Positions 1,132 to 64,000 of a stretch of 64,000 bases of DNA are shown in pieces (the stretch's first letter is position 1; the number at the start of each line of letters is the position of its first letter). The notes beneath the pieces are model-generated. The model was not told the origin of the DNA. It was given only the letters and a program-made list of their open reading frames with translations, and did not search any database. The stretch lies in IMG/VR virus record IMGVR_UViG_3300035212_003113, positions 124,001-188,000 of that record; one strand, written 5' to 3'. The position numbers and the translations under genes are program-made.

Positions 1132-2703
1132 TTGAAACCACTCAAAGAGCATTATCCATTTCCTGCCTTTCGCCCTGGCGTAGAGGAGCTGCTTGACGCG
1201 CTAGACAGCAGCGAGCAAAAGAAATACTTTATTATACGCGGCAGAACAGGGTCAGGCAAAAGCGCAATTTCAGTTGCACTTTCGCGAAAGTACGAAGCAC
1301 ACATCCTAACTGCCACTAAGCTCCTACAGGACCAGTATTCAGGCACTCCTGTATTCAATGCGGAGTTCGTGCTCAAAGGCAAGAGCAATTATTCTTGTAC
1401 TATTTCTGGCGGCAGCATGTCTGATGCGCCATGTGGTAGCAGGAAGCTGCTTCAGCTAGGTAAGGCAAAATACAGCTTGCCGGAGAATACGCAGGCCGAG
1501 TTGCGACAGGCATGTGCCAAAAATAACAGGTGCGAGTATTACCAGAAAAAGTATGCACTGCCGCATACAGCTGGCGGGATCCTGAACTATGACCTGGCAT
1601 TTTCTAGCGCCTTTACCGGAAAAGCTATTATCCTTGACGAAGCACATAACTTCATCGACAAGGTGCTGGACTTCTATTCTCTAGAGATTCCTGTAAAACG
1701 CATCGTCTCGCTGCTTAAAATAAAAGACCTGCCAAATCAAACCAATTACGCTGACTGGCTAAAGCGTGTTCGCGGTGCTGCGGCTATCCGTGCCGAAGTA
1801 TCATCTGATGCAAAAACAATCGAGCAGTGTAAGCAGATCGCAGACCGAGTATCTGCCATTCTACAGGAGGCGCGCCTGCCAGGCGACTTCTATGTAGACT
1901 CAGAAAACGAAAAGGTGCAGATTAAACCAATCTATCCGCATAGCATTGCGCATAAATTTTTGTCGCGCTTTGAAAAGATCTTTTTTCTTTCAGCCACAAT
2001 AGACGCAAAGTTTGCAGAAGTACTTGGCCTTGAGCCCGAGCGCACAGCAGAATTTAATCTAGAGTCCAGCTTTCCACTTGAAAATCGGCCTATTTACTTT
2101 CCGAAAGACATACCTACGATCAACTACTCTACCAAGTTTGATCGCAGCCTGCCTTGTATCCAGTTGCTTGATTCAATTCTAGAGCGGCATCAGGGCCAAC
2201 GCGGAATTATACACACCTCGAATTATCGAGTATTTAATGCGCTACAGCTAATGTACGGCACAAATAAGCGCTTTACTTGGGTCGAACAGGGTGCCAATAA
2301 AAGCCTGGCGCTATCGGCGCATCGGGCACAACCAGACTCTGTATTAGTAAGTCCTTCCATGATGGAAGGCGTAGACCTTGCAGGCGATCTAGGCAGGTTT
2401 CAGGTTATTCTAAAACTGCCGTTTCCAGCCCGTTCGGACTACATGGAAGCGCTAAATAACGCCATGCCAGGTATCTATGAAATGGCAACCCGTAATGCTC
2501 TAGTGCAGGCATATGGTCGCGCGGTAAGATCAGATGATGACTGGGCTCATACTTATGTGCTGGACGGTAGCTTGCGATTTATGCTTGAAAGTATCGATTC
2601 ATATTTTGCTAAAGCAGTACGCATGGGTTCATGGGAAAAGCTCAAGGGAGCTTTGCAGTCTGGTGCTATTGGCCAAGATATAAAAGCAAAGCAGGAGAAG
2701 TGA
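1132..2703 (+). CDS. DinG/XPD-family SF2 helicase with putative Fe-S cluster
   Basis: GRTGSGKS Walker A, LKGKSNYSC plus three more Cys, DEAH, LSAT, EGVDL, QAYGRAVRSDDD. Confidence 0.9.
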   Translation: MKPLKEHYPFPAFRPGVEELLDALDSSEQKKYFIIRGRTGSGKSAISVALSRKYEAHILTATKLLQDQYSGTPVFNAEFVLKGKSNYSCTISGGSMSDAPCGSRKLLQLGKAKYSLPENTQAELRQACAKNNRCEYYQKKYALPHTAGGILNYDLAFSSAFTGKAIILDEAHNFIDKVLDFYSLEIPVKRIVSLLKIKDLPNQTNYADWLKRVRGAAAIRAEVSSDAKTIEQCKQIADRVSAILQEARLPGDFYVDSENEKVQIKPIYPHSIAHKFLSRFEKIFFLSATIDAKFAEVLGLEPERTAEFNLESSFPLENRPIYFPKDIPTINYSTKFDRSLPCIQLLDSILERHQGQRGIIHTSNYRVFNALQLMYGTNKRFTWVEQGANKSLALSAHRAQPDSVLVSPSMMEGVDLAGDLGRFQVILKLPFPARSDYMEALNNAMPGIYEMATRNALVQAYGRAVRSDDDWAHTYVLDGSLRFMLESIDSYFAKAVRMGSWEKLKGALQSGAIGQDIKAKQEK

Positions 2704-4007
2704 TGGCAGAGAAAAATTTCTTGGACAAGCTAAAGCAGAAGGCCGGCGAAGTATTAGGTCACCCGTATTTGCAGCAGGCTTCGTCGCTGGGAAATAATCT
2801 GCTTGAAATTACTGCTAATCTCACGCACAATAAAAATCCGCTCAGCATTGGATCTGCTGTGCTTGCTGGAGCAAATGTAATTGCGGATGCCCTGAACGTC
2901 GAATTCACCAATCCTATAAACTTCTACGCATCAAAGCACGACCTGCGCGTACATGACGGACACCTTCACAAGCTCCTGTTGCGCTCCGGAGTTACCAGCC
3001 AATTCCCGCTCGCAACTGTTCTTAAGTATGATACAATGAGTTTTGTAAAGCTGGCTTTTAGCGAAGAGTCGGCCATGTACTGGATTAAGCAAGTGCCACA
3101 GGTAAAGTCGTATGACGTCTATGCTGCGACAGACGAATCTGCAAATCAATACTGGGTTAGTCCTAATTTCGACAGCTCATTGGTACACAATTTTCTGTGG
3201 AGTAAGTTTAAAAACGGCATAAATCTATCCTATGGCAGCTCTGCTGATGATCATTCAGGACTAGACGTAGAAATCTCAGAGCTTCCAGACCTAGGGACAT
3301 ATACCGAGCTAACCGAGCGGTCTGCTGCGGAAATGGTCGACTACATCAAGCTTTCAAAGAGCATTGGAATAAGCCGCAGCTTCCTGCTGTACGGCAAGCC
3401 TGGAACTGGCAAGACAAGCTGGACCGAGCAGATCGCGAAGTCATTCGGTAGCCGGCTTGTCAAGGTAGACTCCTCATTCTTAGAGCAAGTAGATAATAAA
3501 GAGATTGAGCAGATCCTGTCGCTGCTTAAGCCAGAGCTGGTACTGTTTGACGATTTTGATCGGGTTGATTTCGAAGAATTCGAAGGCAAGTTCCTCTATA
3601 TAACCGAGAACTTAAAGCGCAAATATCCTAATATTGCGTTCTTTGCTACCGCCAACAACACCGAGGTCATTGGCGAAGCTCTTATGCGACCAGGCCGTTT
3701 TGATGAGAAGTACGAGTTCTCTTGCCCAACATCAAAAGCTTGCCTAGAGATAATGGACGTTTACGCTAAGAATCTTGGCGTGCAAATTGATGCTGCGGAT
3801 GCCATGCTAGCGATATCAAAATACAGCCTTACTCCGGCAGAGTGCAAGGAGATAGTTCTGCGGTTGCGCCTACGCCCCGGCCTCAAGATAAAGGCGATAG
3901 TTGCAGATCTTAAGAAGTTTGAGATCACTGACGACAATGACGGTGAGCCCTTGCCAGAGCAAGGCGCAAAAAAGCGCGGTCGCCCGCGAAAGAACCCAGA
4001 AGAATGA
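2703..4007 (+). CDS. classical AAA+ ATPase with unique N-terminal domain
   Basis: GKPGTGKT Walker A, LFDDFD Walker B, ATAN sensor 1, RPGRFD; ATG 2703 overlaps upstream stop. Confidence 0.88.
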   Translation: MAEKNFLDKLKQKAGEVLGHPYLQQASSLGNNLLEITANLTHNKNPLSIGSAVLAGANVIADALNVEFTNPINFYASKHDLRVHDGHLHKLLLRSGVTSQFPLATVLKYDTMSFVKLAFSEESAMYWIKQVPQVKSYDVYAATDESANQYWVSPNFDSSLVHNFLWSKFKNGINLSYGSSADDHSGLDVEISELPDLGTYTELTERSAAEMVDYIKLSKSIGISRSFLLYGKPGTGKTSWTEQIAKSFGSRLVKVDSSFLEQVDNKEIEQILSLLKPELVLFDDFDRVDFEEFEGKFLYITENLKRKYPNIAFFATANNTEVIGEALMRPGRFDEKYEFSCPTSKACLEIMDVYAKNLGVQIDAADAMLAISKYSLTPAECKEIVLRLRLRPGLKIKAIVADLKKFEITDDNDGEPLPEQGAKKRGRPRKNPEE

Positions 4008-10450: not shown

Positions 10451-10490
10451 GAGCCGATCCAGTATTACGATTGGATCGGCTCAGATTTTT
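10451..10490 (+). terminator. hairpin, putative intrinsic terminator upstream of lon
   Basis: gagccgatcca-N10-tggatcggctc followed by agattttt. Confidence 0.6.
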
Positions 10491-10539
10491 AATCTGTAAG
10501 ATTCTAAGACAAATGCTGCATTCCGCAGCCGGAGTATAA

Positions 10540-12960: not shown

Positions 12961-12964
12961 ATCT

Positions 12965-12992
12965 AAAAAGGGCCCGCAAGGGCCCTTTTTTT
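12965..12992 (+). terminator. intrinsic terminator
   Basis: aaaaagggccc-gcaa-gggccc plus T7. Confidence 0.9.
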
Positions 12993-13006
12993 ATTGTAAC
13001 GAGGAC

Positions 13007-13624: not shown

Positions 13625-13957
13625 ATGAGCGAGGCAGACAGGCTGTATTTCGAGGCTCTGAACGCAATAAAAGAGGCAGCTGATCAGCAGGTCGGCCCCC
13701 TGAGCAGCAATACCCGGCGCGTAGCTGCTGCCAAGGCAGACATAAGTGACGCCCTTATGGCCCACGGAGTAGACCTTATTATTCAGGCTCTGATGCTGGA
13801 CCTTCAAGAAGATATAGAGCTGCGCAAGAAGGTCGGAGTCGAGTGCCGAGTAGCAGAAAAAAAGCTAGAGATGCTATCCAAGGCGCTTTATTGTTCTATT
13901 CGAAATGCAGATAAGCCTGTGATTGAGATAGAAGAGTTTGAGGAACTTGATGAGTAA
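13625..13957 (+). CDS. hypothetical protein
   Basis: GAGG RBS; in-operon ORF. Confidence 0.6.
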   Translation: MSEADRLYFEALNAIKEAADQQVGPLSSNTRRVAAAKADISDALMAHGVDLIIQALMLDLQEDIELRKKVGVECRVAEKKLEMLSKALYCSIRNADKPVIEIEEFEELDE

Positions 13958-14375
13958 ATTTGAATTGCTGTCCAGCGATCATCCTGCCCTGCGGCAGGTG
14001 TGCAGGCCGGTGAGTTTTGATGATGATATCCTTGAGCTGCGCGAAGCGCTCTTTCGCATATGCAAAGAAAATGCCGGCATGGGTCTGGCAGCAAATCAAA
14101 TAGGCAGCAATCTACGGGCTTTCGTAATAGACAATGGCGGATTAAAACTTTATGCAAATCCTGAAATAGTAGAGGCATCAGAGCCTTTCGTTTTTGATGG
14201 AGAGGGCTGTTTGTCCTTTCCGGGCGAGGTATTATGCACCCGCCGCTACAAAAAAATTCTGCTGCGCAGCGATAGCGGTCCGGATGAAATTCTGACCGGT
14301 ATCGTTGCAGTTGCAGCCCAGCATGAGCTGGATCATTTAAATGGCATAACAATGCACGATAGGAGTAAGATATGA
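13950..14375 (+). CDS. def: peptide deformylase
   Basis: GMGLAANQIG, EGCLS, QHELDHLNG motifs. Confidence 0.95.
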   Translation: MSKFELLSSDHPALRQVCRPVSFDDDILELREALFRICKENAGMGLAANQIGSNLRAFVIDNGGLKLYANPEIVEASEPFVFDGEGCLSFPGEVLCTRRYKKILLRSDSGPDEILTGIVAVAAQHELDHLNGITMHDRSKI

Positions 14376-51844: not shown

Positions 51845-51849
51845 GTTAT

Positions 51850-53108: not shown

Positions 53109-53176
53109 GCCGTCTGCGCAAAATCTGCAAACCACTAATATAGGTAGGACCCGAAACCTATGATTGGTGGTATAAA

Positions 53177-53947: not shown

Positions 53948-53956
53948 GGAAAGCAT

Positions 53957-54745
53957 ATGAACATTGACGGCACATACAAAGTAGGCAATAACAAGTATAT
54001 CTACCTAAACAGCCGAACAGGCGAGGGCTTTAGCAAGCTGATCGGCCTAATGCGAGGCTTCCTTAATTACCAGCTATCTATAATGGAGTTTCCGAGCTTT
54101 GGGCGGGACGATCTTGAGCAGGAGATGCTGGCACTGGCCATGGAGGCCCTGCCGCGGTACGACGAGAGTAAGCCTGCGAATTTGCTCACCTTTCTACAGA
54201 ACCACGTGAAAAATCGTCTGATCAATATGTGTAAGTTCTACAGTGAGAAGCGGCGCTGTGCTACCCACGTGGACAGCGGCATGCAGAAGGTTCGTTGTAA
54301 TTCGTGCCGCACGTTCTTCAGGGCTCGGAACGAAGTAGAGACCCTGTCCTGTGCAAAGTGCGGCGAGTCAGCTGCTCGAAATAGTGGGATGTGGAAGTTT
54401 TATAATCTGATTGCCATTCCTGGCCAGATTCCGGTTAATGACAGTGACGTACCAATTGAGCAGGAAATCGACCCAGACCTGTCGCAATTTACCGCAATAG
54501 GATGCGCTGGCGGCCCGATTACAGTGGATCATAACATTGATATTTCACGGCTTTTGGACAAGGAAGACGAAGTAAATAAATCAATAATCAATCTAGTTTG
54601 TCAGGGATACAGCCGGGCAGAGATCGCGATTAGACTTAATTTGAGTTCTTCAATTGTAAGTAAAAATCTGACGGATGTCTGCAACAGGCTAAGAAATAGG
54701 ATAACAGAGGATGGTAATGAATTTTCAGCTCTTCAAGACGGCTAA
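53957..54745 (+). CDS. sigma-70-family-like factor with internal zinc ribbon
   Basis: RDDLEQE...ALPRYD...TFL...VKNRL (region 2); CNSC...CAKC; GYSRAEIAIRLNLS (region 4 HTH). Confidence 0.8.
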   Translation: MNIDGTYKVGNNKYIYLNSRTGEGFSKLIGLMRGFLNYQLSIMEFPSFGRDDLEQEMLALAMEALPRYDESKPANLLTFLQNHVKNRLINMCKFYSEKRRCATHVDSGMQKVRCNSCRTFFRARNEVETLSCAKCGESAARNSGMWKFYNLIAIPGQIPVNDSDVPIEQEIDPDLSQFTAIGCAGGPITVDHNIDISRLLDKEDEVNKSIINLVCQGYSRAEIAIRLNLSSSIVSKNLTDVCNRLRNRITEDGNEFSALQDG

Positions 54746-57700
54746 GCTACAGAACGAGATCACCCTTCCCCGGACCGACTTCCTTGTAGAGGTATTGCGG
54801 AGCATCATTGCTCCGCTTTACCTTATGAATGACAAGGCTCATCCGGAGCTTAATGGCATTGCCGAAGCACTGGCCTCTTATTACGAAGAGAGTCAGCCAG
54901 GAGAACTGGTGTTCAGGAGCACGCGTTCGCGTGATCCATATGAGCTGTTCAATCCCAAACTATTGAATCTAAAGCTATCGGATGTCCGCGGCATTGCCTC
55001 CAAGGTCTCTAATAGCTCTATTGAGTTGACAGACAAAAGCATTATCAGTCTGATAGATCTCGTAATGCACGAGACGATCTACATTTGCTGGCTAGAGTTT
55101 TGTGCAATGCATCCCGGTCTTAGCTTTTTCGCTGGAGCCGAGGGCCTTTCTCCGGCAGAGCTGATTAAGACAGCCGTTGAGCAGGTAGAGGCGGGAGAAG
55201 AGGATGGAGAAAGCGAACAGCCAGCAGGCAAGGACAGGAATACGGGCAGGCGTATAAAAAGGAACAATGAAGTTCTAAAGACTAACCTTGGTCCTTCTTA
55301 TGATCAAGTTCGTAGAGCCAAGGCGGCATTGGCGTATCGCGCTGCATTCAATGGCTATACCCATAAAGGCTGGATGGACCTTATGCCATCGCACCAAGTG
55401 CAGACCCCCAAAGGCCTAAAGACCAAGGTGATAAGCACTGCTACCAGAGATGCGTTAAAAAATAAAAGCTTTAACATGATGGTGTTTTGGGCAGATAGCT
55501 CGGACCACGTCTCAAACGTAATGGCCAATATAGCCGAAAGGCTTGATCGCGGCGAGCGTCCGAACGTAGATGGCATGCCGCTGACTCGCAATCCTGTTGC
55601 ATCAAACGCAATTTACACAAATCCTGATTACTACTATACTGCTGGACAGAGCAAGGTCAGCCCCGCTGCCATCTATTCTGCATTCAACCTCGGGCACTCG
55701 GAGACAGTTGCCACACAGGCCGCAAACATGGGCCTGCTTAAGCACAAGCTTCTCTTTGGAGAAGAGGGTGACAGAGAGACGTTAATCTCTGGTTATGCAC
55801 AGTCTGCAATCGGCGCTCACAAGCGCATCCGCTCGGCATTCGGCAAGAATCCGGAACTCCTAAAGGATAAGCTGTCCTCTGTTCTAGTTGACGGCTTTAA
55901 TTTTCATGTCGAGCTGATGAAGAGCAATGGCGTGAATTCTCTTGAGTACCTGAATATCTTCAAGGCTCTGTCCAATAGTTCGTTTAAATCTTTTGCGGAT
56001 AGATTTCTCGCTCGCATAGTGGCGTCTTTGCGCACAGACTATGCATCGCTCCAACAGGCAAGCCAAGACTCATTCAACATTGTAGAAAAGCATATCTTAG
56101 AGTCCAAGACAGAGTTTGAGGGGCTTGCATCAGAGCTCCGGCACATGATGATTAGCGACGAAGACATGGCCAAGATCAATTCCGGCATGGGGTACTCTGA
56201 CTTCTTGCACTTCTTTGCGGAGATTGAGCTGAATCTGCCGAGCTATCTCCACTCCAAGTTTTCACAAGAAAACGTAAATAGCTTTTTTGCACCAGTTCCT
56301 GTTCTCAATACAGAGGCCTCTATAAAGCTCGGAGATAAAGAAATTAGGGCTAGCAACATGGTAGAGTCCTTCTTGGGCACCGCCAAAGAGAAGCAGAATC
56401 CCGATGAGCTAAAGTTTGAAAGTGCGGTCGCGCAGGCACTGAAAACACTTTCTTCGAAAAAAGTTAAGATGTCGCAAGATTCCATCAGTCTAATCCGCTC
56501 TGCATTAGAGTCGGTTTCTAAGCCGAACAGGCTCATGATGCCAGATGTTGATTTCGAAAGCGCCATCAAAGATCTTCAGACGCTGCAGAATGCGATCAAG
56601 CAGGGCGTAGAATTGGCTCCAGAGCAGGTAGACGCGATGCTAAAGGGCTTGCAGGTCCGCAATATCTATAGCAAAGAGTCGGCCCCAGAAGATATTCGCG
56701 AGGTATCTGCCAAGGCCGCAGCTGCCGTTGCAGATCACGGGTACAAGGATACGCTGTTCAATGTGTTTTCTCACTCTACGGTCGCATTGAGAAATCTATA
56801 CGTACAGACAAAGCAGCTCTCGATACTGCTCGCCAGCAAAAGAAAAAACAAAGAGCAGACGAGTGCTGCTCAAAAGCAGTGGAGAGAGGCTCCTAGTGGA
56901 AGCAGGGACCAGGGCATTGCATTCAAGATGCGAAATCTCTTAGAGACAGAAGGAAAAGACATAGATGCGCAGATCTCTGCTGCGCGTAAGTCGGTTTCAG
57001 TAAGACTGGAGCAGCTACTGCGAGGCGCCAAGGAAGACGAAAAGTCTTCTGCTTTGGCCGGAACAGGCCTGAAAAAAACTTCTGAGAAGGTCGTGGGAGA
57101 AATAAGGCTTGCTCTTGCCGAGGGCAAAACTTACAAAAAGCTTGATCGTGATGCAATGCTCAGTATTGTCAACGCTTATGACATGTCTGAGTCAGGTAGA
57201 CTTAATATTGAGGCGAGCCTGTTAGAGGGGATGCTCACCGCGCACGCTACCGCTGGGACACCGCTGTCTGCAGATGGCAAAATTCTAACTACTGCAGATC
57301 TAAGCAATGCTTGCCGCGCATTGGTGCAAAACAAGCAGACTGAGGCCGACTATGACACAATATCTGCATTTCTAGCGTCGTCATTCAGTGACGACTTTAA
57401 CCCAGATTTGCCTACGCAAACGTACTCGGACTTCTTTGGAGCTCAAAAGGAGTACCGAGGAACTCTTTCTGTTCTAAAGCCTGACTCAAATGAGCCAGAT
57501 GAAGAGGCAGATCCTATCTTGCACCTAGGCGTAGGTAGCGTGCCGTTTACTGTCGATACGGTACTTGAGAAGTTTATCGGAGATGTCTCTGGCCATGCCC
57601 TAAACAACCAACTTTTAACAAATGCCGTCTCTAGCCAGTTTTCTGCAAACAAGGAGAGGATTGAAAAAGAGATCGAAGAGAACTTTGAAGTAGATAGTGA

Positions 57701-60700
57701 CTCGGGCCTTACCAAGGGCACAAGAGACGACTTAAATGAAAAAATAAGACAGCTTGATTCGTCGTCAATATTGGGGCAGCACGGCCTCGATCTTGAGCCA
57801 CAAGCCGATGAAATTGCGAAATGGGGAACTGGGCCAGATGCTCGAGCCTCAGAGATAAAGTTCCGTATTGCGGCACTGGGCAGATTTCTTGGCAAGCGAA
57901 CGCGCTCCTCTGTAATAGCTGTCCTTGAAAAGACAATCAATCCTGGTATTAAGACAAAGAAGAAAGATGGCTCAGAGGAGGATTCGTATTTTGATGAGTC
58001 TTATTACGACCCCCTCTTGACTCTAGTCTCCAGAGAGATGAGACTTGCTCTTGAGACAGAGATCCAGGACGCAGTAGTTGCGCGCTATAAGCGTGGCAAA
58101 TTTAGAGAAACCACTAGCCTCGAACAGGCAGAGGGCGGAGCTGCCCGGGTCGATGAGTCCGAGGGGGACATCTCGGAGAAGAAAAAGAAGACCGTGAAAG
58201 AGGATGCTGGAGAATCTGTTGTCAGAGGAGAGGATATAAAGCAGTACGTATCTCGTTGGATTCAGTACCCTAATTACGGTGTCCGCGGAGGTCTGACTTC
58301 CTACTCAATGGCAGGAGTGATTGCTGATGCGCTCGAGAAGCGTGACTCTGGAGATGCCGGCCCTTTTTCCAATGCCATATCTTCTGGTTCTAAGCTTTCC
58401 TCTGATACGGTCAAGCTAAACAGCCTTCCGCAATTCGTAAGAGTTCTAAAGAATATGGCCAAGCTCGCCACTGGTTATCAGCTGTTCTATGTTCCAGCTG
58501 CCAAGAATCTTTCCCAGATTCTTGCGATCAGCAAGAAGAGTGGAGGTCTTTCTAGCCATCGCGAGATTGCTATTGACATAGGCGTTTATTGCGATCCGCT
58601 GACTGCAGCCAAGAACCTTGCCCGTGGAGCTAAGATCGGTGACACATTCAAGGAGGCCTTTGATCGCTTACTTATCAAGGTCGGAGACGAAAAGACAGAT
58701 AGCTATGAAGAGTGGCGAAATGCCGTCATAGAAGTGTCAAATTACTCTGTTGGCTCAAGGAGAAAGGCGGTATCAGGCTTGCACCAGCTTTCTACCGAGG
58801 ACAAGGATTTTCTAGATTCTCTTTTGGACAGAAAGTACGAACCAAGCCTATCATGGGGAGGAGACATGTACTCTGACTCAGAGAGGACGAGGTTGCGTGT
58901 GATCGGAAAAATTCTCCTGGAGCCTCGCCAGATTCCATGGTTAAAAGAATTCGTACAAGTTACCAAGGATCCGCAGCTGCTAGATGCCATGAAAAAGCGC
59001 TTTCCCAAAAAAGCAGAGGTCCTTGGAAAAGAGTTGGAAGACCTAGAGAAAAGCGTCGAGATGCGCAAAGCGTTCGCGTACGAGGCAAATGCCGCCCGCG
59101 ACCAGGAACCCGCATCTACCGGCACAGATCTTGTGAAGATTTTTCTTTCTGCCTATGCAAAACTAAATCATATTGATGCAGAAAAGAAGAAAACCTATAG
59201 AGCAGCTGTGTCCAAGGTGTCATCCGAAGTAAGGCCGAATGATCTAGTGCTGGCAATTTCTCGAGACACGAAATGCCAGGCGGCGACGGACTCTATGCTA
59301 GATAATTTACTCGAAAGCGGCGGAAAGCTAATCAACTCTGCTCTTGCGGGCGTTGCCGGCTACAAAGATATGGAGAGCGCAAAGGCAGACCCGTCTTTCA
59401 AGATAAAACTGCGCGAAGGCTTTTTGCAAAAACTATCTAAAGACCCATACTTTATCATTTCCTTTAAGGCTGGGCTAGAAGATCTATTTGGAGATGATTT
59501 CGATGACGCTGGCGAAGCCAAAGCGATATCCGCTGCGCTCAGCACGACAGGAGAGGTAGTACAGGATAACCGCGAAGTGGTAACGGGCGCACTTCTTGCC
59601 GCAGTGGGCGAGACGTGGAGGATTGTTCTCGGGGTTGCCTCCAAGGATGACGCATCGCGCGCAGCTGTCGACTCGCACGAATCGACCGCGCTTGCCGCCG
59701 TCGAGGGCTTTGCCAGAGTGCAGGGCGATCACCTGTCCAAGTATTCTGACGGGGTTTCGGTAAGAGATGCGATCCGCAGTGCCTGCGGAGCTAATGCAAA
59801 CCTAAATAAATTCATTGGCATGGTTGCCATGAAATACACAGGCGAAACGTTGCTCGGTGGGGAGAAGATTGAAGCGACGCGAACAATGATGAGTGATATG
59901 GCTTCTCTGTTCACTCCGAACTCAGAGCAGGTAAAGAAGTTTATAGAGACTGGCGACACCGCGCCAACTGCTTCTAAGACAATAAGAAGAAATGCGCCTG
60001 CTGCTCCGCCACAGCCAGTTGTTCGTCCGCCAGGTTTTTATGAAAATCTTTGCGAGGATGCTCAGTCTGTAGTTACGCAAGTCCTCGATTACTTTAATGC
60101 ATCTGAGGCTGTCCGTGACCGCGTTTTTGAGGCCAAGCAAGCAGCATCACGCGCCACTGCAAACTCGCAGGATAATCAGATCCGCCAGTTGTTTGAAGAG
60201 ATTAGCGTGGCAACAATGCCTGTGGCTGGTGCCCTGTCTCAGTATAAAACCGCATATCAGCTACATGCTAAGCATATACTTGAAAGGGCGAATGAGCTTA
60301 CTGGCATAATGAAGCAGGCATATCCCGATATTCACAATGTCCTTGACGAGATCTCTGCCAAAGGTATGGATCTTGCTCGAATCACTGACGAAGATCTTAA
60401 GAACTTGATTGCTGGAGATATGGCAAAAAATGCTCCAGAGGTCAAAGCATTTGTCTCTGCAGTGTCGACCGAGGGGGTTGACGCAGTCGTAGCGGCTACG
60501 CGTCGACAGGTCTACAGTGGAGTTGTGCCAAAAGGCAAGAAGATCGTAAGCCCTGCAGAAAGGGACAGGGCAAATATCACTCTGGACAAAATCTCTGCAG
60601 AGATAAAAAAATATCTTGATGTCAACGGACTAAACCTACTTGGCGACGAGGTGCTTAACAGCAGGATCTTGAGAGCTATCGGAATGGACGTTCTTAATGT

Positions 60701-62807
60701 ATTTAGAAACGGCAAGGTTGTCTTTGCCGAAGCAAGCAAAATCCTTGTCTCGCTTGGCGACTCCGCACCGATTACCCAAGAGGAGCTGGACCAGCGCCTG
60801 CGCTCCATGGTGCAAGACGCCATGGCGGACAAGGCGGCCGTCATAACCCGTTATATTTCCGGTAGCACCCAAAGCTTTGAAGACGTAGAAGAAGCAATGG
60901 AGTACGAGAGGACCGGGGCGACCGATCAGGATGAGCTGGAGGCAAGATTTAAGCTTGTTCGCCGCCATGGCCCAGGTATTCTTGAAAAGAAAAAGATCAT
61001 AACTGAGCGCGTGGTTTTCGCTTCCGATCTTTCAAAGAAAGCAGAGACGCAGTCGAGCCGCATTTCTCCCGAATTCCAATCAGAATTCCAAAAGGCTCAG
61101 GAGAAGATTAATGCGGGACGAAATATTGCTCAAGAGATAATTGAAAGTGCTCAGGGGGCAACAGACAGTGTTGACGAAGAGGTCACCATCTCCGAAGCCG
61201 AAGAGGCGCAAAAAGAAGACGTCCGCCGAAAGATCTCGGCTTATCTTGCCGCTCGCGCCGCTTCTGCACAAGGTGTTGCCAAGAAGATGATCGAGCTACT
61301 CCAGACAGAGGTAGACTCGGCACTTGGTGACGAAGAGGTCTTTGCATTCGTCTCTTTGCCAGGACTCAATACCATGTTGCGTTCACTACAGGGAGTAGAG
61401 AGCATCAGGCCGAATGAACTAGAGAGATCCGCTCGCTCACGCATAGAGCTCGTACTATCGAAAGTGAACGAGGCTTTTGAGGGAAGATTCCGCATTGTCT
61501 TGGACTACGGCAAAAAGGCTTCAGACTTTGATCTAAAGTTAGATGAAAAGCTTTTGGCAATAGTTCGTAAAGTAGATGCTCTAGCGAAGAATGTCGACCC
61601 AGACTCGGCCTCAGGGATCGGTCTATATAATATTCGACTTGCAGCGAGCAGCATACTCGCAGAAAAGAGAACCGTTCGCGATGACGCCAATATCTCCAGT
61701 GTCATCTCCTCTTTAAATGATCTTGATAGTCTGATTGCCATTGATCGCGCTGATCGCGCAAATCCGCGCACTGTCTCAAGTATAATGAGCAGAGTGTCTA
61801 ACCTTGGCGTATCAAGTGCAGATCGCACTGTGATATACAAAGAAGTTCCAGATGGCGCAGGAAGTCAGCAGGCAGTCGCAGACTTTGACAAGGAACTGGC
61901 CAAGATTGATGATTTTGTAAAAGCCAGCGAGGGATTCGGCCTAGAGCCAGAGCTAAAGGCAGTCGTCACACGACTAGGCGAAATGGCAAGTCTCTTGTCT
62001 CCTGGTCGCAGAAAGATAGATACCGGCGCCAACATGGACGGAGCCCTTTCTGCAATAAGAGAGCTTAATAGAGCACTGATCAGAGGCACTAAGCTAGAGA
62101 GAGCACAGCTGGATATGTTCCTTGATAGCATGCATCGCTTTGGCATAAAGACGGACGAGTTTGGCGCCGAGGTTATCGAGGTCACAGAGGATGTCGAGAC
62201 CGCGCCGCTAGAGGCCACAGGTCCTACTGCAGAGGTCCAGGTCGAAGCACCGACAGAAGAGGACGTTTTGGAAATTAGTGAGGATGACGTAACTTCCCTA
62301 GAGCCCCCCGCCGCAGAGTCAGGAAAAATGGCGCCTGATGAGGAGGAGCCGGTTGAAATCTCACAAGAGGATATTCAGCCGATTGAAGAGCCAGCCGCAG
62401 AAGCCCCTCCGGCCCCTGTTGCCCCGGCCTATGACCTGACCGAGGCACATGATGCCTTGCACCAGGTCGCAGAAGGTACTTCGTCTGCTGCCAAGGCCGC
62501 CGGCGCAGTTGGCGATACCGCCAACAAGCTCTCGACCCTGGTCAGCCGGCTCAGTGCAATGCTGCCCCCAACTGTGGACGTAGCTGCACTGCCCGCCAAG
62601 TTGCATGCTGCAACTGAAACGGCCAAGGCGGTGCAGGCCCTGGTGTCCTCGTCTGTCCGCTCGCCCACATGGACGGCAGGTTCTGAGTTGCCGCACATGC
62701 CCGAGTTGGACAAACTGATCTCCGAAGTAGATCAGATTATGTCGCCAACACGGCGGGCATCTAGGTCTCTCCGCTTCGTAAGAACAGGAGACTCCTGGTT
62801 GATCTGA
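54717..62807 (+). CDS. giant hypothetical protein (~2,700 aa), possibly virion-internal
   Basis: Uninterrupted ORF, charged and helical, acidic Pro-rich region near C-terminus; no catalytic motif recognised. Confidence 0.8.
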   Translation: MNFQLFKTAKLQNEITLPRTDFLVEVLRSIIAPLYLMNDKAHPELNGIAEALASYYEESQPGELVFRSTRSRDPYELFNPKLLNLKLSDVRGIASKVSNSSIELTDKSIISLIDLVMHETIYICWLEFCAMHPGLSFFAGAEGLSPAELIKTAVEQVEAGEEDGESEQPAGKDRNTGRRIKRNNEVLKTNLGPSYDQVRRAKAALAYRAAFNGYTHKGWMDLMPSHQVQTPKGLKTKVISTATRDALKNKSFNMMVFWADSSDHVSNVMANIAERLDRGERPNVDGMPLTRNPVASNAIYTNPDYYYTAGQSKVSPAAIYSAFNLGHSETVATQAANMGLLKHKLLFGEEGDRETLISGYAQSAIGAHKRIRSAFGKNPELLKDKLSSVLVDGFNFHVELMKSNGVNSLEYLNIFKALSNSSFKSFADRFLARIVASLRTDYASLQQASQDSFNIVEKHILESKTEFEGLASELRHMMISDEDMAKINSGMGYSDFLHFFAEIELNLPSYLHSKFSQENVNSFFAPVPVLNTEASIKLGDKEIRASNMVESFLGTAKEKQNPDELKFESAVAQALKTLSSKKVKMSQDSISLIRSALESVSKPNRLMMPDVDFESAIKDLQTLQNAIKQGVELAPEQVDAMLKGLQVRNIYSKESAPEDIREVSAKAAAAVADHGYKDTLFNVFSHSTVALRNLYVQTKQLSILLASKRKNKEQTSAAQKQWREAPSGSRDQGIAFKMRNLLETEGKDIDAQISAARKSVSVRLEQLLRGAKEDEKSSALAGTGLKKTSEKVVGEIRLALAEGKTYKKLDRDAMLSIVNAYDMSESGRLNIEASLLEGMLTAHATAGTPLSADGKILTTADLSNACRALVQNKQTEADYDTISAFLASSFSDDFNPDLPTQTYSDFFGAQKEYRGTLSVLKPDSNEPDEEADPILHLGVGSVPFTVDTVLEKFIGDVSGHALNNQLLTNAVSSQFSANKERIEKEIEENFEVDSDSGLTKGTRDDLNEKIRQLDSSSILGQHGLDLEPQADEIAKWGTGPDARASEIKFRIAALGRFLGKRTRSSVIAVLEKTINPGIKTKKKDGSEEDSYFDESYYDPLLTLVSREMRLALETEIQDAVVARYKRGKFRETTSLEQAEGGAARVDESEGDISEKKKKTVKEDAGESVVRGEDIKQYVSRWIQYPNYGVRGGLTSYSMAGVIADALEKRDSGDAGPFSNAISSGSKLSSDTVKLNSLPQFVRVLKNMAKLATGYQLFYVPAAKNLSQILAISKKSGGLSSHREIAIDIGVYCDPLTAAKNLARGAKIGDTFKEAFDRLLIKVGDEKTDSYEEWRNAVIEVSNYSVGSRRKAVSGLHQLSTEDKDFLDSLLDRKYEPSLSWGGDMYSDSERTRLRVIGKILLEPRQIPWLKEFVQVTKDPQLLDAMKKRFPKKAEVLGKELEDLEKSVEMRKAFAYEANAARDQEPASTGTDLVKIFLSAYAKLNHIDAEKKKTYRAAVSKVSSEVRPNDLVLAISRDTKCQAATDSMLDNLLESGGKLINSALAGVAGYKDMESAKADPSFKIKLREGFLQKLSKDPYFIISFKAGLEDLFGDDFDDAGEAKAISAALSTTGEVVQDNREVVTGALLAAVGETWRIVLGVASKDDASRAAVDSHESTALAAVEGFARVQGDHLSKYSDGVSVRDAIRSACGANANLNKFIGMVAMKYTGETLLGGEKIEATRTMMSDMASLFTPNSEQVKKFIETGDTAPTASKTIRRNAPAAPPQPVVRPPGFYENLCEDAQSVVTQVLDYFNASEAVRDRVFEAKQAASRATANSQDNQIRQLFEEISVATMPVAGALSQYKTAYQLHAKHILERANELTGIMKQAYPDIHNVLDEISAKGMDLARITDEDLKNLIAGDMAKNAPEVKAFVSAVSTEGVDAVVAATRRQVYSGVVPKGKKIVSPAERDRANITLDKISAEIKKYLDVNGLNLLGDEVLNSRILRAIGMDVLNVFRNGKVVFAEASKILVSLGDSAPITQEELDQRLRSMVQDAMADKAAVITRYISGSTQSFEDVEEAMEYERTGATDQDELEARFKLVRRHGPGILEKKKIITERVVFASDLSKKAETQSSRISPEFQSEFQKAQEKINAGRNIAQEIIESAQGATDSVDEEVTISEAEEAQKEDVRRKISAYLAARAASAQGVAKKMIELLQTEVDSALGDEEVFAFVSLPGLNTMLRSLQGVESIRPNELERSARSRIELVLSKVNEAFEGRFRIVLDYGKKASDFDLKLDEKLLAIVRKVDALAKNVDPDSASGIGLYNIRLAASSILAEKRTVRDDANISSVISSLNDLDSLIAIDRADRANPRTVSSIMSRVSNLGVSSADRTVIYKEVPDGAGSQQAVADFDKELAKIDDFVKASEGFGLEPELKAVVTRLGEMASLLSPGRRKIDTGANMDGALSAIRELNRALIRGTKLERAQLDMFLDSMHRFGIKTDEFGAEVIEVTEDVETAPLEATGPTAEVQVEAPTEEDVLEISEDDVTSLEPPAAESGKMAPDEEEPVEISQEDIQPIEEPAAEAPPAPVAPAYDLTEAHDALHQVAEGTSSAAKAAGAVGDTANKLSTLVSRLSAMLPPTVDVAALPAKLHAATETAKAVQALVSSSVRSPTWTAGSELPHMPELDKLISEVDQIMSPTRRASRSLRFVRTGDSWLI

Positions 62808-62838: not shown

Positions 62839-62873
62839 GTCTGCTGCTTTTTGTGACAAGTGTAAGTCTTGGC

Positions 62874-64000
62874 ATGAACACACCAACCACAAAGCTAGTC
62901 GAAAAAGACGGCAACTTTATAGTGTCAATTACTGTTCCAACCCGTGATGTCGAGGACGCACTAAATTCTGCCGCCTCGGCAATCATGCCTTCGGCCGAAG
63001 TGCCCGGGTTCCGCCCAGGGCACACGCCACTGCCAGTAATTCGTCAGCATTACTCTACGCAGCTAAAGACGCAGGTGTCGGCCAAGCTAGTGCAGGAGGC
63101 AACTCGCACTGCTCTAAAGCAGCTAAGCATCTCGGCCGGCGCCCGTCCTACGTTAGATGGCGACTGTCGTCCGCGCGGCATTCGCAAGTGGCTCGGCAAG
63201 TTCGATATCAATGGTTCATTTTCTTTTTCGGTTGTGACTCCGGTCCCACCAAGAGTAGAGGCGGTCTGTGTCGACGGACTCAACATCGACACTAATGCGG
63301 ACGACTCCTCTCGTGCCGTAGACGAGCAGCTGCACCACCTGCGTCATGACTTTGTCATCAAGACAGTTTCAGAACTGCCATCCGCCGACGGTGACGAGGT
63401 CGTTTGCTCGATTACCGCTACAGATAGCAACGGACAGGAGATCCCAGACTTACGCCTGACAAGCTTTCCACTTTCCATGGATTTGCAAGCCAGCAACATG
63501 CTTAGCAAGACAATGGCACAGCACCTTCTTGGCAAGCGCCCCGGAGATATCGCAGAATTCTCCGAAGACGGCACCACGTACCGCATGGCTGTGGAAAGCG
63601 TCAGCAACCAGCAGCTGCCCCCCCTTGATGACGAATTTGCGGTCAAGTGTGGTTTCACGTCGCTTGCAGATCTGCGCCAACAGGTACTTAATGAGTGGTT
63701 TCTGAAAAATGCCGGCAGGGTTCGACGAGCGCTACATCTGCAGGTTCGCGAGCAGCTTGTAAAGAACAATCCTTTTGAAGTTCCCTCGGAGTGGCTCGCA
63801 GATTACGACAACAAAGTCCGCGGTCTTGCTCAAAATGACGAAACACTCCAGGGAGCAGATGCAGCGGAGTTCGCAAGGGTTTACGCAGCATCAGACTACC
63901 TACTAGAGCTTCTAGAGGATCAGTTCCCGGCAGAGACTACAATTTCAGATGTAGATTTGATTCAGTACGCAAAAGAAGAGCTGGCAACTGCTGCCGTCAA
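62874..64000 (+). CDS. tig: trigger factor (partial, runs off right edge; absent from ORF track)
   Basis: Manual translation: MNTPTTK...EVPGFRPGHTPLPVIRQHY (GFRxGxxP), VDEQLHHLR, DGDEV, LPPLDDEFAVKCGFTSLADLRQ. Confidence 0.88.
   Translation, partial: MNTPTTKLVEKDGNFIVSITVPTRDVEDALNSAASAIMPSAEVPGFRPGHTPLPVIRQHYSTQLKTQVSAKLVQEATRTALKQLSISAGARPTLDGDCRPRGIRKWLGKFDINGSFSFSVVTPVPPRVEAVCVDGLNIDTNADDSSRAVDEQLHHLRHDFVIKTVSELPSADGDEVVCSITATDSNGQEIPDLRLTSFPLSMDLQASNMLSKTMAQHLLGKRPGDIAEFSEDGTTYRMAVESVSNQQLPPLDDEFAVKCGFTSLADLRQQVLNEWFLKNAGRVRRALHLQVREQLVKNNPFEVPSEWLADYDNKVRGLAQNDETLQGADAAEFARVYAASDYLLELLEDQFPAETTISDVDLIQYAKEELATAAV

What the first reader, a model, noticed from the sequence alone, without database searches (positions are those of the whole stretch)
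2703..64000. Phage-encoded nascent-chain and proteostasis pipeline: bS21, deformylase, trigger factor, GroEL, Lon, ClpP, AAA ATPase
Seen: rpsU (46482), def (13950), tig (62874), groEL (15062), lon (10540), clpP (46857), a classical AAA ATPase (2703) and an I78-like inhibitor (17874), all scattered among phage genes. None is in its bacterial operon (no fmt, groES, clpX or full dnaG in the window). Established: PDF and trigger factor act at the ribosomal exit tunnel, GroEL folds downstream, and Lon/ClpP degrade. bS21, PDF and chaperonins are each known singly in phages. Inference: together they may substitute for each step from initiation to degradation, forming a parallel protein-biogenesis pathway for very large virion proteins.
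Basis: partly seen in the sequence, partly recalled or inferred. Interest (0 to 1): 0.8.

Follow-up and report, generated by a model that had tools for sequence, protein, structure and literature searches.

The report
Huge phage carrying a chaperone-protease toolkit
A complete 372-kb lake-water phage genome really does encode ribosomal protein S21, deformylase, two trigger factors, GroEL/GroES, DnaJ, ClpS, a ClpP-like protease and Lon. Most of this set is inherited across a whole lineage of huge phages, but it looks like a kit that plugs into the host's machinery, not a self-sufficient pathway.

Summary
The window lies in a complete 371,675-bp phage genome with end repeats, a large terminase and a portal. 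It recurs almost unchanged in five lake-water metagenomes.

- **Gene calls:** Seven of the eight pass Pfam cut-offs with catalytic or signature motifs intact. The I78 call does not.
- **Outside the window:** The genome adds GroES, a type-I DnaJ, ClpS and a second trigger-factor paralog. It has no DnaK, ClpX/ClpA, Fmt or methionine aminopeptidase.
- **Close relatives:** The AAA ATPase, PDF, GroEL, S21, the ClpP-like gene, trigger factor and DnaJ keep their places in relatives down to 38% trigger-factor identity.
- **Wider lineage:** 13 other trigger-factor-bearing viral contigs were tested. Ten share this phage's terminase lineage; 8-10 also carry DnaJ, ClpP, PDF or S21.
- **Lon:** It is a recent single capture from Myxococcota-like bacteria (77% identity) and is absent elsewhere in the lineage.
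- **Trigger factor:** The phage copies fall apart from the bacterial ones in the tree and keep the ribosome-docking GFRxGxxP motif. I found no paper describing a phage trigger factor.

Best reading: an accreted, vertically kept kit that supplements and redirects host protein biogenesis. The evidence does not support a parallel pipeline for giant virion proteins.

The parts
2703..4007 (+). Orphan classical-clade AAA ATPase. It has one AAA module and an N-terminal region of about 215 aa of unknown function. No link to proteostasis is shown.
   Evidence: Pfam AAA 2.4e-15. The nearest solved structures are VAT/Cdc48 modules, 2e-17. Walker A is GKPGTGKT, the Arg-finger region is RPGRFD, and Walker B reads DD instead of DE. 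It is conserved next to the helicase in relatives at 64% and 52% identity. No NCBIfam model comes near its cut-off.
10451..10482 (+). Terminator-like hairpin just upstream of lon.
   Evidence: 13-pair stem followed by a T-run.
10540..12960 (+). Full-length LonA protease: N domain, AAA+ module, lid and S16 peptidase. It is a recent capture from bacteria.
   Evidence: NCBIfam equivalog TIGR00763, 1009 bits against a cut-off of 608. PDB LonA 2.7e-225, with [13 protein letters not shown], the Ser in PKDGPSAG and the Lys in GGIKEK all present. 77% identical to bacterial Lons. The phage copies form one clade with 100% support inside Myxococcota-like sequences. Absent from the diverged relative and from 13 of 13 wider-lineage contigs.
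12965..12990 (+). Terminator-like hairpin 5 nt after the lon stop codon. With the upstream hairpin it frames lon as a single-gene cassette.
   Evidence: 11-pair GC-rich stem followed by a T-run.
13950..14375 (+). Short peptide deformylase of 141 aa. It lacks the C-terminal helix of bacterial PDFs.
   Evidence: Pfam 4e-30. The motifs GMGLAANQ, EGCLS and QHELDH are intact. The PDB alignments end at residue 142 of 145. The hits include the short phage PDFs 5mtc and 3uwa. NCBIfam equivalog 78 bits, below the cut-off of 104. Present in L042 (65%) and L048 (54%), absent in L043.
14635..15051 (+). Conserved 138-aa ORF ending 10 nt before groEL, in the position groES holds in bacteria. Its function is unknown and it is not GroES-like.
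   Evidence: Present directly upstream of groEL in all three relatives at 48-86% identity. 48 representative homologs. AF2 pLDDT 97. No significant PDB fold match; the best hits are OB-like with E of 0.06 or worse.
14951..14979 (+). Perfect sigma-70 consensus promoter (TTGACA, 17 nt, TATAAT) 83 nt before the groEL ATG.
   Evidence: It is the only 12/12 site in the whole 371-kb genome. It is 12/12 in L042, 10/12 in L043 and absent in L048. It lies inside the orf138 coding sequence, so part of this conservation may reflect the coding constraint.
15062..16774 (+). Group I chaperonin GroEL with an extra stretch of about 27-45 aa at the start of the apical domain.
   Evidence: Pfam Cpn60 2.6e-64. 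PDB GroELs 7e-113, against 4.5e-26 for the phage EL chaperonin 6tmt. GDGT is kept. The alignment breaks between aa 226 and 272. NCBIfam subfamily NF009487 486 bits, above its cut-off of 352; equivalog 477 bits, below 582. Orthologs in relatives are 68-96% identical and are interrupted at aa 99/100.
17874..18464 (+). That assignment is not supported.
   Evidence: Pfam Inhibitor_I78 18.5 bits, below the cut-off of 23.6, over 33 of 65 positions. The Atlas search was uninformative. Conserved in relatives at 41-87% identity.
46482..46745 (+). Ribosomal protein bS21 with an N-terminal extension of about 22-24 aa rich in Arg and Asp.
   Evidence: Pfam 5e-11. NCBIfam equivalog TIGR00030 42.7 bits, above the cut-off of 28.95, with the match starting at residue 23. 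PDB bS21 7e-7. Orthologs directly upstream of the ClpP-like gene in L045 (87-88%) and L044 (52-57%).
46857..47444 (+). Divergent ClpP-family serine peptidase. It sits in the replication/recombination block, not the head module.
   Evidence: Pfam CLP_protease 1e-31. PDB ClpP1 1.5e-19. Ser100 and His123 are invariant. The canonical Asp is replaced by an invariant Thr174, and D169 is invariant. It falls below every NCBIfam ClpP cut-off and also below the ClpP-related head-protease cut-off. The top PHROG hit is labelled head maturation protease, 1e-23. A separate head-protease candidate lies 4 kb from the portal. It is the only CLP_protease gene in the genome.
54711..62807 (+). 2698-aa ORF of unknown function immediately upstream of trigger factor.
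   Evidence: No Pfam, PHROG, PDB or Atlas match. Fast-evolving orthologs of 2094-2608 aa in close relatives. Absent or much shorter at this position in the wider lineage.
62874..64000 (+). Trigger factor TF1. The gene continues 112 nt beyond the window and encodes 412 aa in full.
   Evidence: Pfam Trigger_N 2.5e-19. NCBIfam tig aligns over the full length at 138 bits, below the cut-off of 180. GFRPGHTP matches the GFRxGxxP signature, and PGFR.G is invariant in the clade. The AF2 model (pLDDT 87) matches full-length TFs 3gty at 1e-18 and 2vrh/1w26; the N domain has TM 0.77 and the middle domain is FKBP-like.

Best explanation
The window is part of a complete 372-kb freshwater huge phage. Its lineage has accumulated, and vertically kept, a set of host-like protein-biogenesis and quality-control genes. 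They work as a take-over and supplement kit for the host's proteostasis network. They are not an autonomous pathway.

Three kinds of parts are combined.
1. Ribosome-proximal factors that need no partner:
- bS21 with an N-terminal extension, which would bias initiation on host 30S subunits.
- A short PDF.
- Trigger factor TF1, which keeps the GFRxGxxP docking motif and would sit at the exit tunnel of host ribosomes. A second paralog, TF2, has lost that motif.
2. Complete machines: GroEL plus a GroES encoded 190 kb away and, in this sublineage only, a newly captured LonA.
3. Adaptor or passive parts that must use host ATPases: a type-I DnaJ without DnaK, ClpS without ClpA, and a ClpP-like peptidase without ClpX/ClpA.

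Shown here: gene identities, motifs, fold, phage context, conservation and the different ages of the genes.

Inferred: that the proteins act on host ribosomes and host ATPases during infection, and that the benefit is higher folding and turnover capacity, and control over it, while a 500-gene phage with 16 proteins of 1000 aa or more is being expressed.
For: Identity and intactness.

Phage status and assembly.

Extra members elsewhere in the genome:
- GroES.
- DnaJ with an HPD motif, zinc finger and C-terminal domain.
- ClpS at 91 bits.
- TF2, Trigger_N 2e-14, 26% identical to TF1 over the full length.

Missing partners: Fmt, ClpX/ClpA-type AAA_2, HSP70, MAP. AAA_2 is also over its cut-off in 0 of 13 lineage contigs.

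Vertical inheritance:
- The same gene order holds in L042, L043, L045/L036 and in the 155.7-kb contig covered by L037, L044 and L046-L048.
- Identities there are AAA 52-64%, PDF 54-65%, GroEL 68-96%, S21 52-88%, ClpP 48-77%, TF 38-56% and DnaJ 41%.

Wider lineage, 13 TF-bearing IMG/VR contigs of 60 kb or more:
- A homolog of this phage's terminase at 34-54% identity in 10.
- DnaJ in 10, ClpP in 9, PDF in 9, S21 in 8, Cpn60 in 2, Cpn10 in 2, Lon in 0.

TF tree: all lineage TFs fall outside the 65 bacterial rows. TF1 and TF2 are sisters with 98% support.

Lon tree: one phage clade with 100% support, nested in Myxococcota-like Lons.

Independent regulation: a unique perfect sigma-70 promoter before groEL and hairpins framing lon.
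Against: - No expression or biochemical data exist. No RNA run could be listed.
- Several members fall below curated NCBIfam cut-offs: PDF, TF1, TF2, DnaJ, GroES and ClpP. Altered or lost activities are therefore possible.
- The ClpP-like protein has Thr at the canonical Asp position.
- The AAA ATPase has a DD Walker B motif and nothing ties it to proteostasis.
- All wider-lineage contigs are fragments (CheckV 14-66%) and were picked because they carry TF. The co-occurrence counts are therefore descriptive, not a statistical test.
- The branch separating phage TFs from bacterial TFs has only 82-88% SH-aLRT support, and several rows sit on long branches.
- The host is unknown. The Myxococcota hint rests on Lon alone.
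Confidence: 0.6

Rival explanations
1. One reading: a self-sufficient parallel pathway from initiation to degradation, dedicated to folding very large virion proteins.
For: Every stage has at least one phage gene. The genome has 16 ORFs of 1000 aa or more. In the close clade TF lies immediately downstream of a 2100-2700-aa ORF and overlaps it by 19 nt in L045.
Against: No DnaK, ClpX/ClpA, Fmt or MAP. The GroEL cage is known to be limited to clients of roughly 60 kDa (established knowledge). In most of the wider lineage TF follows a roughly 280-aa ORF, with no giant gene, so TF predates the giant ORF. Lon is private and recent. PDF is dispensable in L043. The genes are dispersed in the replication/recombination block, not the virion module.
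Confidence: 0.1
2. A conflict toolkit. The proteolytic parts (Lon, ClpP-like, ClpS) and perhaps DnaJ mainly degrade or disarm host proteins, such as defence factors and regulators. Helping phage proteins to fold would be secondary.
For: The 224-genome jumbo-phage survey reads patchy ClpP and ClpS genes as deployed against the host (PMC7824862). ClpS is an adaptor that delivers substrates to host ClpAP (same paper). Lon is a fresh, insulated single-gene cassette, as expected for an arms-race acquisition.
Against: This does not explain the conserved S21, PDF, two TFs and GroEL/GroES, which act on nascent or unfolded chains. ClpP, DnaJ and TF are stable across the lineage, not patchy. The two readings do not exclude each other.
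Confidence: 0.2
3. The ClpP-like gene is the prohead (head maturation) protease and does not belong to the set.
For: The best PHROG hits are head maturation proteases (phrog_94, 1e-23). NCBIfam also gives sub-threshold hits to ClpP-like prohead protease models.
Against: It is a stand-alone 195-aa protein and scores best against cellular ClpP (Pfam 110.7 bits; PDB ClpP1). It lies 45 kb from TerL and the portal, next to S21, Mre11 and Rad50, and keeps that position in relatives. Another protein 4 kb after the portal carries a head-protease-like segment (phrog_18299, 6.9e-14). The NF045542 score of 58 bits is below the cut-off of 120.
Confidence: 0.08
4. The genes are neutral or decaying passengers picked up from hosts, with no coordinated function. 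Alternatively, the contig is cellular or chimeric.
For: The genes are host-like, scattered and of different ages.
Against: Motifs are intact. Conservation holds over TerL divergence down to 34% identity. DTR, CheckV 100% and the phage hallmark genes speak for a complete phage. The same sequence is present in five independent runs, and contigs bridge the junctions.
Confidence: 0.02

Closest known systems
Translation-related genes of metagenomic huge phages (Al-Shayeb et al. 2020, PMC7162821)
   Same: A huge phage encoding bS21 with an N-terminal extension and a PDF, read as redirection of host translation.
   Different: A term search of that paper's main text found no mention of chaperones, proteases or GroEL, and its 'Lon' matches were other words. 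A separate library search recorded no 'trigger factor' occurrence in it. Here S21 and PDF are joined by two TFs, GroEL/GroES, DnaJ, ClpS, a ClpP-like gene and Lon.
Chaperone and peptidase genes of cultured jumbo phages (Iyer et al. 2021, PMC7824862)
   Same: HSP60, HSP10, DnaJ, ClpP, ClpS and Hsp20 are each recorded in some jumbo phages. DnaJ and ClpS are read there as recruiters of host HSP70 and ClpAP.
   Different: [quoted passage not shown] A term search of it found neither a trigger factor nor a Lon. This phage's TerL is at most 26% identical to any GenBank phage.
Phage chaperonins (Pseudomonas phage EL gp146, PDB 6tmt) and phage co-chaperonins (T4 gp31; own knowledge)
   Same: A phage-encoded part of the chaperonin system, presumed to fold phage proteins.
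   Different: The window's GroEL is far closer to bacterial GroEL (7e-113) than to EL gp146 (4.5e-26). It comes with a GroES homolog, whereas EL gp146 is reported to work alone and T4 supplies only the co-chaperonin (own knowledge).
Short phage peptide deformylases (Vibrio phage Vp16 PDF, PDB 5mtc; cyanophage S-SSM7, PDB 3uwa)
   Same: Same three catalytic motifs and the same truncation after motif 3.
   Different: It belongs to an unrelated phage lineage. PDF is not universally kept here and is absent in L043.
Bacterial tig-clpP-clpX-lon gene cluster
   Same: The same four kinds of protein, apart from ClpX, are present. A true bacterial example, tig-clpP-clpX, was seen in a record mislabelled as a phage.
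   Different: In the phage the genes are 16-50 kb apart, clpX is missing, TF and the ClpP-like gene are highly diverged, and only Lon is close to bacterial sequences.

Membership tests
Tailed huge phage (virus, not a cell) | Large terminase, portal and complete ends | tested here: met
   TerL phrog_675 2.7e-60 and portal phrog_16240 1.9e-49. DTR and CheckV 100%. 127-bp end overlap.
Trigger factor (tig) | N-terminal ribosome-binding domain with the GFRxGxxP signature | tested here: met
   Trigger_N at 70.5 bits, above the cut-off of 22.2. TF1 has GFRPGHTP, and the motif is invariant in 10 clade members and present in 9 lineage TFs. TF2 has PHPKGSVP instead.
Trigger factor (tig) | Three-domain fold: N domain, FKBP-like head and C-terminal arms | tested here: met
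   AF2 pLDDT 87 and pTM 0.71. Foldseek matches full-length TFs 3gty at 1e-18, 2vrh and 1w26; the middle domain matches the TF PPIase and FKBPs only weakly.
Trigger factor (tig) | Curated equivalog score (TIGR00115, 180.2 bits) | tested here: not met
   TF1 scores 138.3 bits and TF2 166.1 bits. Both align over the whole model.
Trigger factor (tig) | Binding to the ribosome at uL23, and chaperone or PPIase activity | not testable with these tools
   Needs ribosome co-sedimentation and refolding or PPIase assays.
LonA protease | N domain + AAA+ + S16 domain, the equivalog score, Walker A/B and the Ser-Lys dyad | tested here: met
   TIGR00763 at 1009 bits, above the cut-off of 608. The four Pfam domains are present. 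The motifs were seen in the alignment to 7p6u.
Group I chaperonin GroEL | Cpn60 family score and the GDGT nucleotide site | tested here: met
   Pfam 218 bits. NCBIfam subfamily NF009487 at 486 bits, above the cut-off of 352. AGDGT is aligned.
Group I chaperonin GroEL | Equivalog score (TIGR02348, 582.1 bits) | tested here: not met
   476.8 bits. The alignment splits around an extra apical segment at aa 227-271.
Group I chaperonin GroEL | A co-chaperonin (Cpn10) is available | tested here: met
   Cpn10 at 34.9 bits, above the Pfam cut-off of 21.1, at genome 330508-330897. It is below the NCBIfam GroES cut-offs, 36 bits against 99.
Peptide deformylase | Three catalytic motifs: GxGxAAxQ, EGCLS and HExxH | tested here: met
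   GMGLAANQ, EGCLS and QHELDH. Pfam 104.9 bits.
Peptide deformylase | Equivalog score (TIGR00079, 103.95 bits) and the C-terminal helix of bacterial type 1B PDFs | tested here: not met
   78.3 bits. The protein ends 3 residues after the aligned core, like the 137-aa phage PDF 5mtc.
Ribosomal protein bS21 | Family and equivalog scores | tested here: met
   Pfam 42.6 bits, above the cut-off of 27. TIGR00030 42.7 bits, above 28.95.
ClpP (ATP-dependent Clp protease proteolytic subunit) | Ser-His-Asp catalytic triad | tested here: inconclusive
   Ser100 and His123 are kept and invariant. The canonical Asp aligns with an invariant Thr174. D169 nearby is invariant.
ClpP (ATP-dependent Clp protease proteolytic subunit) | Curated NCBIfam ClpP scores | tested here: not met
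   The best score is 95.2 bits against a cut-off of 228. TIGR00493 gives 66.4 against 308.6. The Pfam family cut-off is met.
ClpP (ATP-dependent Clp protease proteolytic subunit) | A cognate unfoldase (ClpX or ClpA) encoded alongside | tested here: not met
   The only AAA_2 match in the genome is Lon. None is over the cut-off in 13 lineage contigs.
ClpP-related head maturation protease | Model score and a position in the head module | tested here: not met
   NF045542 scores 57.9 bits against a cut-off of 120. The gene lies between S21 and the DnaG/Mre11/Rad50 genes, 45 kb from the portal.
Type I DnaJ (Hsp40) | J domain with HPD, CxxCxGxG zinc finger and C-terminal domain | tested here: met
   All three Pfam domains are over their cut-offs. 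HPD is seen in the sequence. The NCBIfam equivalog scores 175 bits, below 377.
Classical AAA ATPase acting in proteostasis | AAA module plus a feature linking it to a protease (fused peptidase, IGF-type loop or C-terminal HbYX) | tested here: not met
   The AAA module is present. By reading the sequence I saw no peptidase domain, no IGF/LGF tripeptide and no C-terminal HbYX motif. Walker B is DD.
Peptidase inhibitor I78 | Pfam gathering score | tested here: not met
   18.5 bits, below the cut-off of 23.6, over 33 of 65 profile positions.

The most novel reading that the evidence does not exclude
A whole lineage of freshwater huge phages has carried its own trigger factor since its origin. It would be the first ribosome-associated chaperone of viral descent. 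In this clade the gene is duplicated into a ribosome-docking form (TF1) and a non-docking form (TF2). Together with phage bS21 at the 30S platform and a phage PDF, TF1 would remodel both ends of the host ribosome into a phage-specialised translation and folding station, with DnaJ, ClpS and the ClpP-like protein steering host ATPases downstream.
Probability: 0.3. Interest if true: 0.8.

Novelty: new variant of a known kind. Interest (0 to 1): 0.62.

Why it matters
Host-like translation genes in huge phages are known. The folding and degradation side has been described only gene by gene.

This work adds three things.
- **Breadth:** One complete genome holds at least eleven such genes.
- **Inheritance:** Most of them are inherited across a deep phage lineage. 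They are not sporadic pick-ups.
- **New members:** The set includes trigger factor and LonA. The paper library and the two large jumbo-phage surveys I searched describe neither in a phage.

The pattern of what is present and what is missing is informative. Co-chaperones, adaptors and passive proteases are there, while their ATPases are not. That makes a testable prediction about how a virus takes control of a cell's proteostasis network.

If TF1 docks on host ribosomes, it would be a tractable case of a virus altering the ribosome exit site.

Tried and rejected
1. **orf138 as a GroES or gp31-like co-chaperonin.** It occupies the groES position. Its model is very confident (pLDDT 97), but no fold match reached significance; the best hits were OB-like at E 0.06. 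Rejected.
2. **Giant 2698-aa ORF.** No hit in Pfam, PHROGs, PDB sequences or the Atlas. The idea that TF is its dedicated chaperone is weakened, because the giant ORF is missing at that site in most of the lineage.
3. **I78 inhibitor.** Sub-threshold, and the Atlas search was uninformative.
4. **Close relatives in public collections.**
   - No megablast hit among GenBank phages.
   - IMG/VR relatives found with single proteins were only fragments, with no Lon.
5. **'Phage' trigger-factor hits in GenBank.** The one annotated hit, inspected in detail, is bacterial chromosome (tig-clpP-clpX beside leuA and metX). The other hits are short unannotated records at about 22% identity.
6. **Host from Lon in reference genomes.** The pattern scan gave a 73% hit in a contig binned as an archaeon, with no phage genes beside it, and then a 62% hit in Myxococcales. 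This is only a weak host hint.
7. **Expression.** No RNA run could be listed.
8. **AAA ATPase as the ClpP partner.** No docking motif was seen.
9. **General use of sigma-70 promoters.** Sites matching 11 of 12 or better are not enriched in the genome, 5 against 3-8 in shuffles.

Full report
**What the window is**

The 64-kb window is bases 124001-188000 of a single 371,675-bp contig.
- GC content is 0.51 and there are no Ns. The two ends share an identical 127-bp overlap. Five tRNA genes are present.
- The tools identify the contig as an IMG/VR virus record with direct terminal repeats and CheckV completeness 100%.
- My ORF set has 513 ORFs and 94% coding density; 418 ORFs lie on one strand and 16 are 1000 aa or longer.
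- Phage hallmark genes are clear: large terminase (TerL; phrog_675, 2.7e-60) directly followed by the portal (phrog_16240, 1.9e-49), plus RIIA, topoisomerase II, DnaB and ribonucleotide reductase. One of four large minus-strand ORFs in the window carries a Peptidase_S74 tail-fibre chaperone domain.
- Five lake-water metagenome runs from five studies hold at least 91% of the sampled words of bases 10500-17000. Contigs from four of them bridge both junctions of the lon gene with 0-1 differences.
- The contig is therefore a complete phage genome, neither cellular nor chimeric. Its TerL is at most 26% identical to any phage in the GenBank collection.

Seven pass Pfam gathering scores.
- **Lon** is a full LonA. 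It passes the NCBIfam equivalog model (1009 bits against 608). Walker A and B, the catalytic Ser and the Lys are all in place.
- **PDF** is 141 aa from the ATG at 13950. It has all three catalytic motifs and stops right after the third, as the short phage PDFs 5mtc and 3uwa do.
- **GroEL** starts at the ATG at 15062, behind a GGAG. It is a group I chaperonin (7e-113 to bacterial GroELs) and far less similar to the phage EL chaperonin. It has an extra apical segment.
- **S21** passes its equivalog model and has an N-terminal extension of about 23 residues. This is the feature Al-Shayeb et al. describe for huge-phage S21 (PMC7162821).
- **The ClpP-like protein** keeps Ser and His, but an invariant Thr replaces the canonical Asp. 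It falls below every curated ClpP cut-off and below the cut-off for ClpP-related head proteases. It is a divergent member of the superfamily.
- **Trigger factor** (412 aa, running 112 nt past the window) is very diverged; the best PDB hit is 7e-9. It still aligns end to end with the tig model, keeps GFRPGHTP, and its AF2 model (pLDDT 87) matches full-length trigger factors at 1e-18.
- **The AAA protein** is a single classical AAA module behind an unknown N-terminal region. Nothing ties it to proteostasis.
- **The I78 call** is sub-threshold.

**What the rest of the genome adds**

| Searched for | Result |
|---|---|
| GroES (Cpn10) | Present at genome 330.5 kb |
| Type-I DnaJ with HPD, zinc finger and C-terminal domain | Present at 196.2 kb |
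| ClpS | Present at 75.2 kb, 91 bits |
| HSP20 | Borderline match |
| Second trigger-factor paralog, TF2 | Present at 93.3 kb; 26% identical to TF1 over the full length; docking motif degenerate |
| Formyltransferase | Absent |
| ClpX/ClpA/ClpB-type ATPase | Absent |
| HSP70 | Absent |
| M24 methionine aminopeptidase | Absent |

Where a machine has several parts, the phage tends to encode the co-chaperone, the adaptor or the passive protease, and not the ATPase. The exceptions are the self-contained machines, GroEL/GroES and Lon.

**Close relatives**

The homolog search for TF found a tight group of 11 clusters at 37-100% identity on contigs of up to 173 kb. After a gap come the bacterial TFs, at 28% identity or less.

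Reading the neighbourhoods of these contigs and walking along one of them gave the same gene order in all of them:
- helicase, AAA, ..., PDF, a small ORF, orf138, GroEL;
- then ..., S21, ClpP-like, ..., DnaG zinc ribbon, Mre11, Rad50, ..., a Cas4-like gene, a sigma-like ORF, the giant ORF, TF;
- then ..., Pol III alpha, ..., RuvC, DnaJ, RecA.

In the most diverged contig the identities are AAA 52%, PDF 54%, GroEL 68-78%, S21 52%, ClpP 48%, TF 38% and DnaJ 41%. That contig has no Lon, Tmk or ligase at the syntenic place. One close relative (Lon 93% identical) lacks PDF.

**Wider lineage**

A pattern scan of IMG/VR with a TF alignment returned 33 further TF-bearing viral contigs. I tested the 13 that are 60 kb or longer.

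| Gene | Contigs with it (of 13) |
|---|---|
| Homolog of this phage's TerL (34-54% identity, E 1e-17 to 1e-150) | 10 |
| DnaJ | 10 |
| ClpP (sometimes as tandem pairs) | 9 |
| PDF | 9 |
| S21 | 8 |
| Cpn60 | 2 |
| Cpn10 | 2 |
| Lon | 0 |
| ClpX-type ATPase over its cut-off | 0 |

All 13 contigs are fragments (CheckV 14-66%, apart from one 100%-complete provirus that has none of these genes), so a missing gene says little. They were also chosen for having TF, so these are descriptive counts and not a test.

In a tree, the TFs of this lineage fall outside all 65 bacterial TFs (branch support 82-88%). TF1 and TF2 are sisters with 98% support. The remaining 'viral' TFs nest among bacterial ones and are probably host DNA next to proviruses.

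TF's stable neighbours across the lineage are Mre11, Rad50 and Pol III alpha. The giant ORF beside it exists only in the close clade, and at half that length in one other contig.

**Ages and regulation**

- Lon is 77-79% identical to cellular Lons. The 14 phage copies form one clade with 100% support, nested among Myxococcota-like sequences. That fits a single recent capture and gives a weak hint about the host.
- Lon is framed by strong terminator-like hairpins.
- The only perfect sigma-70 consensus promoter in the genome sits 83 nt before groEL. Two relatives keep it.
- The genes are thus separately controlled and were acquired at different times. They do not form an operon.

**Interpretation**

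The evidence fits a vertically kept, stepwise-assembled kit that supplements host protein biogenesis and steers it.
- At the ribosome: S21, PDF and TF1.
- In folding: GroEL/GroES, DnaJ acting through host DnaK, and TF2.
- In turnover: ClpS and the ClpP-like protein acting through host Clp ATPases, plus Lon in this sublineage.

Three things do not fit an autonomous pipeline for giant virion proteins: the ATPase partners are missing, the chaperonin cage has a size limit (established knowledge), and TF predates the giant ORF. A partly antagonistic role for the proteolytic parts remains plausible, as Iyer et al. proposed for ClpP and ClpS (PMC7824862).

**Novelty**

- S21 and PDF in huge phages are known.
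- HSP60, HSP10, DnaJ, ClpP and ClpS are each known in cultured jumbo phages. HSP10 and HSP60 were reported in different phages.
- PHROGs already holds an unannotated full-length Lon family (phrog_15585) and an unannotated TF-like family (phrog_26774). Neither gene is therefore absent from phage databases.
- I found no paper that describes a phage trigger factor or a phage LonA.
- The one annotated 'phage' tig in GenBank is bacterial DNA.
- What is new is the breadth of the set in one genome, its lineage-wide inheritance, and the viral trigger-factor clade.

**Limits**

- There are no expression data and no biochemistry.
- The host is unknown.
- All relatives are incomplete.
- Several family assignments fall below the curated equivalog cut-offs.

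Noticed in passing
Genome 93346-94743 (L006:346-1743), outside the window: A second trigger-factor paralog, TF2 (465 aa). It is 26% identical to TF1 over the full length, sister to the TF1 clade in the tree, and its ribosome-docking motif has degenerated to PHPKGSVP.
   Followed up: partly
Genome 75167-75403 (L129); 196226-197158 (L008:10226-11158); 330508-330897 (L015:14308-14697); 109126-109335 (L130): ClpS (91 bits), a type-I DnaJ, GroES/Cpn10 and a borderline HSP20 are encoded elsewhere in the same genome. No DnaK, ClpX/ClpA, Fmt or MAP was found.
   Followed up: yes
L043:7894-10569; L048:5732-8440; L042:14798-17479: In all three relatives groEL is interrupted at residue 99/100, right after the GDGT nucleotide-binding motif. 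Two carry a LAGLIDADG intein (891 and 902 aa); the third has a roughly 1-kb insert. The window's own groEL is uninterrupted.
   Followed up: partly
L024-L030, L033, L034; handles G005, G008-G011; L036, L037, L047, L048: Inteins or introns are common in this lineage. TerL is split near residue 200 in many relatives. The helicase, GMP reductase, Pol III alpha and the Cas4-like nuclease carry Hint or LAGLIDADG inserts in relatives but not in the window's genome.
   Followed up: no
window 14951-14979: The only perfect sigma-70 consensus promoter (12/12) in the 371-kb genome lies inside the 3' end of orf138, 83 nt before the groEL start. It suggests strong transcription of groEL by the host RNA polymerase.
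   Followed up: partly
window 18559-32297 (minus strand), with a hairpin at 18479-18515: Four ORFs of 1081-1177 aa lie on the opposite strand. Their GC content is higher (0.55 against about 0.50) and they share segments of 42-50% identity. One has a Peptidase_S74 tail-fibre chaperone domain. A strong hairpin that reads as a terminator on both strands closes the block. It looks like a variable tail-fibre cassette inserted in the early region.
   Followed up: partly
window 46482-54745: S21, a DnaG CHC2 zinc-ribbon ORF (48097-48669) and a weak sigma-70 region-2 ORF (53957-54745) lie within 8 kb in the same order as the bacterial rpsU-dnaG-rpoD operon, with other genes interleaved. This may be a remnant of the capture event or a coincidence.
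   Followed up: no
window 14635-15051: orf138 defines a family of about 48 representative clusters with a very confident predicted fold (pLDDT 97) that matches nothing solved. It always sits immediately upstream of groEL in this clade.
   Followed up: yes
handles G008 and G009 (IMG/VR contigs of 239 and 160 kb): In these lineage members one of the two tandem ClpP genes has an in-frame TGA. This could be stop-codon recoding, a sequencing error or a pseudogene.
   Followed up: no
Genome 25125-25212: ARAGORN calls a tRNA-Ser with the unusual anticodon ACT among the five phage tRNAs.
   Followed up: no
GenBank CAKLQH020000005.1 / CAKLQF020000005.1 (L131): Records named 'Acinetobacter phage MD-2021a' contain ordinary bacterial chromosome (metX, leuA, tig, clpP, clpX). 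The label in the phage collection looks wrong.
   Followed up: yes
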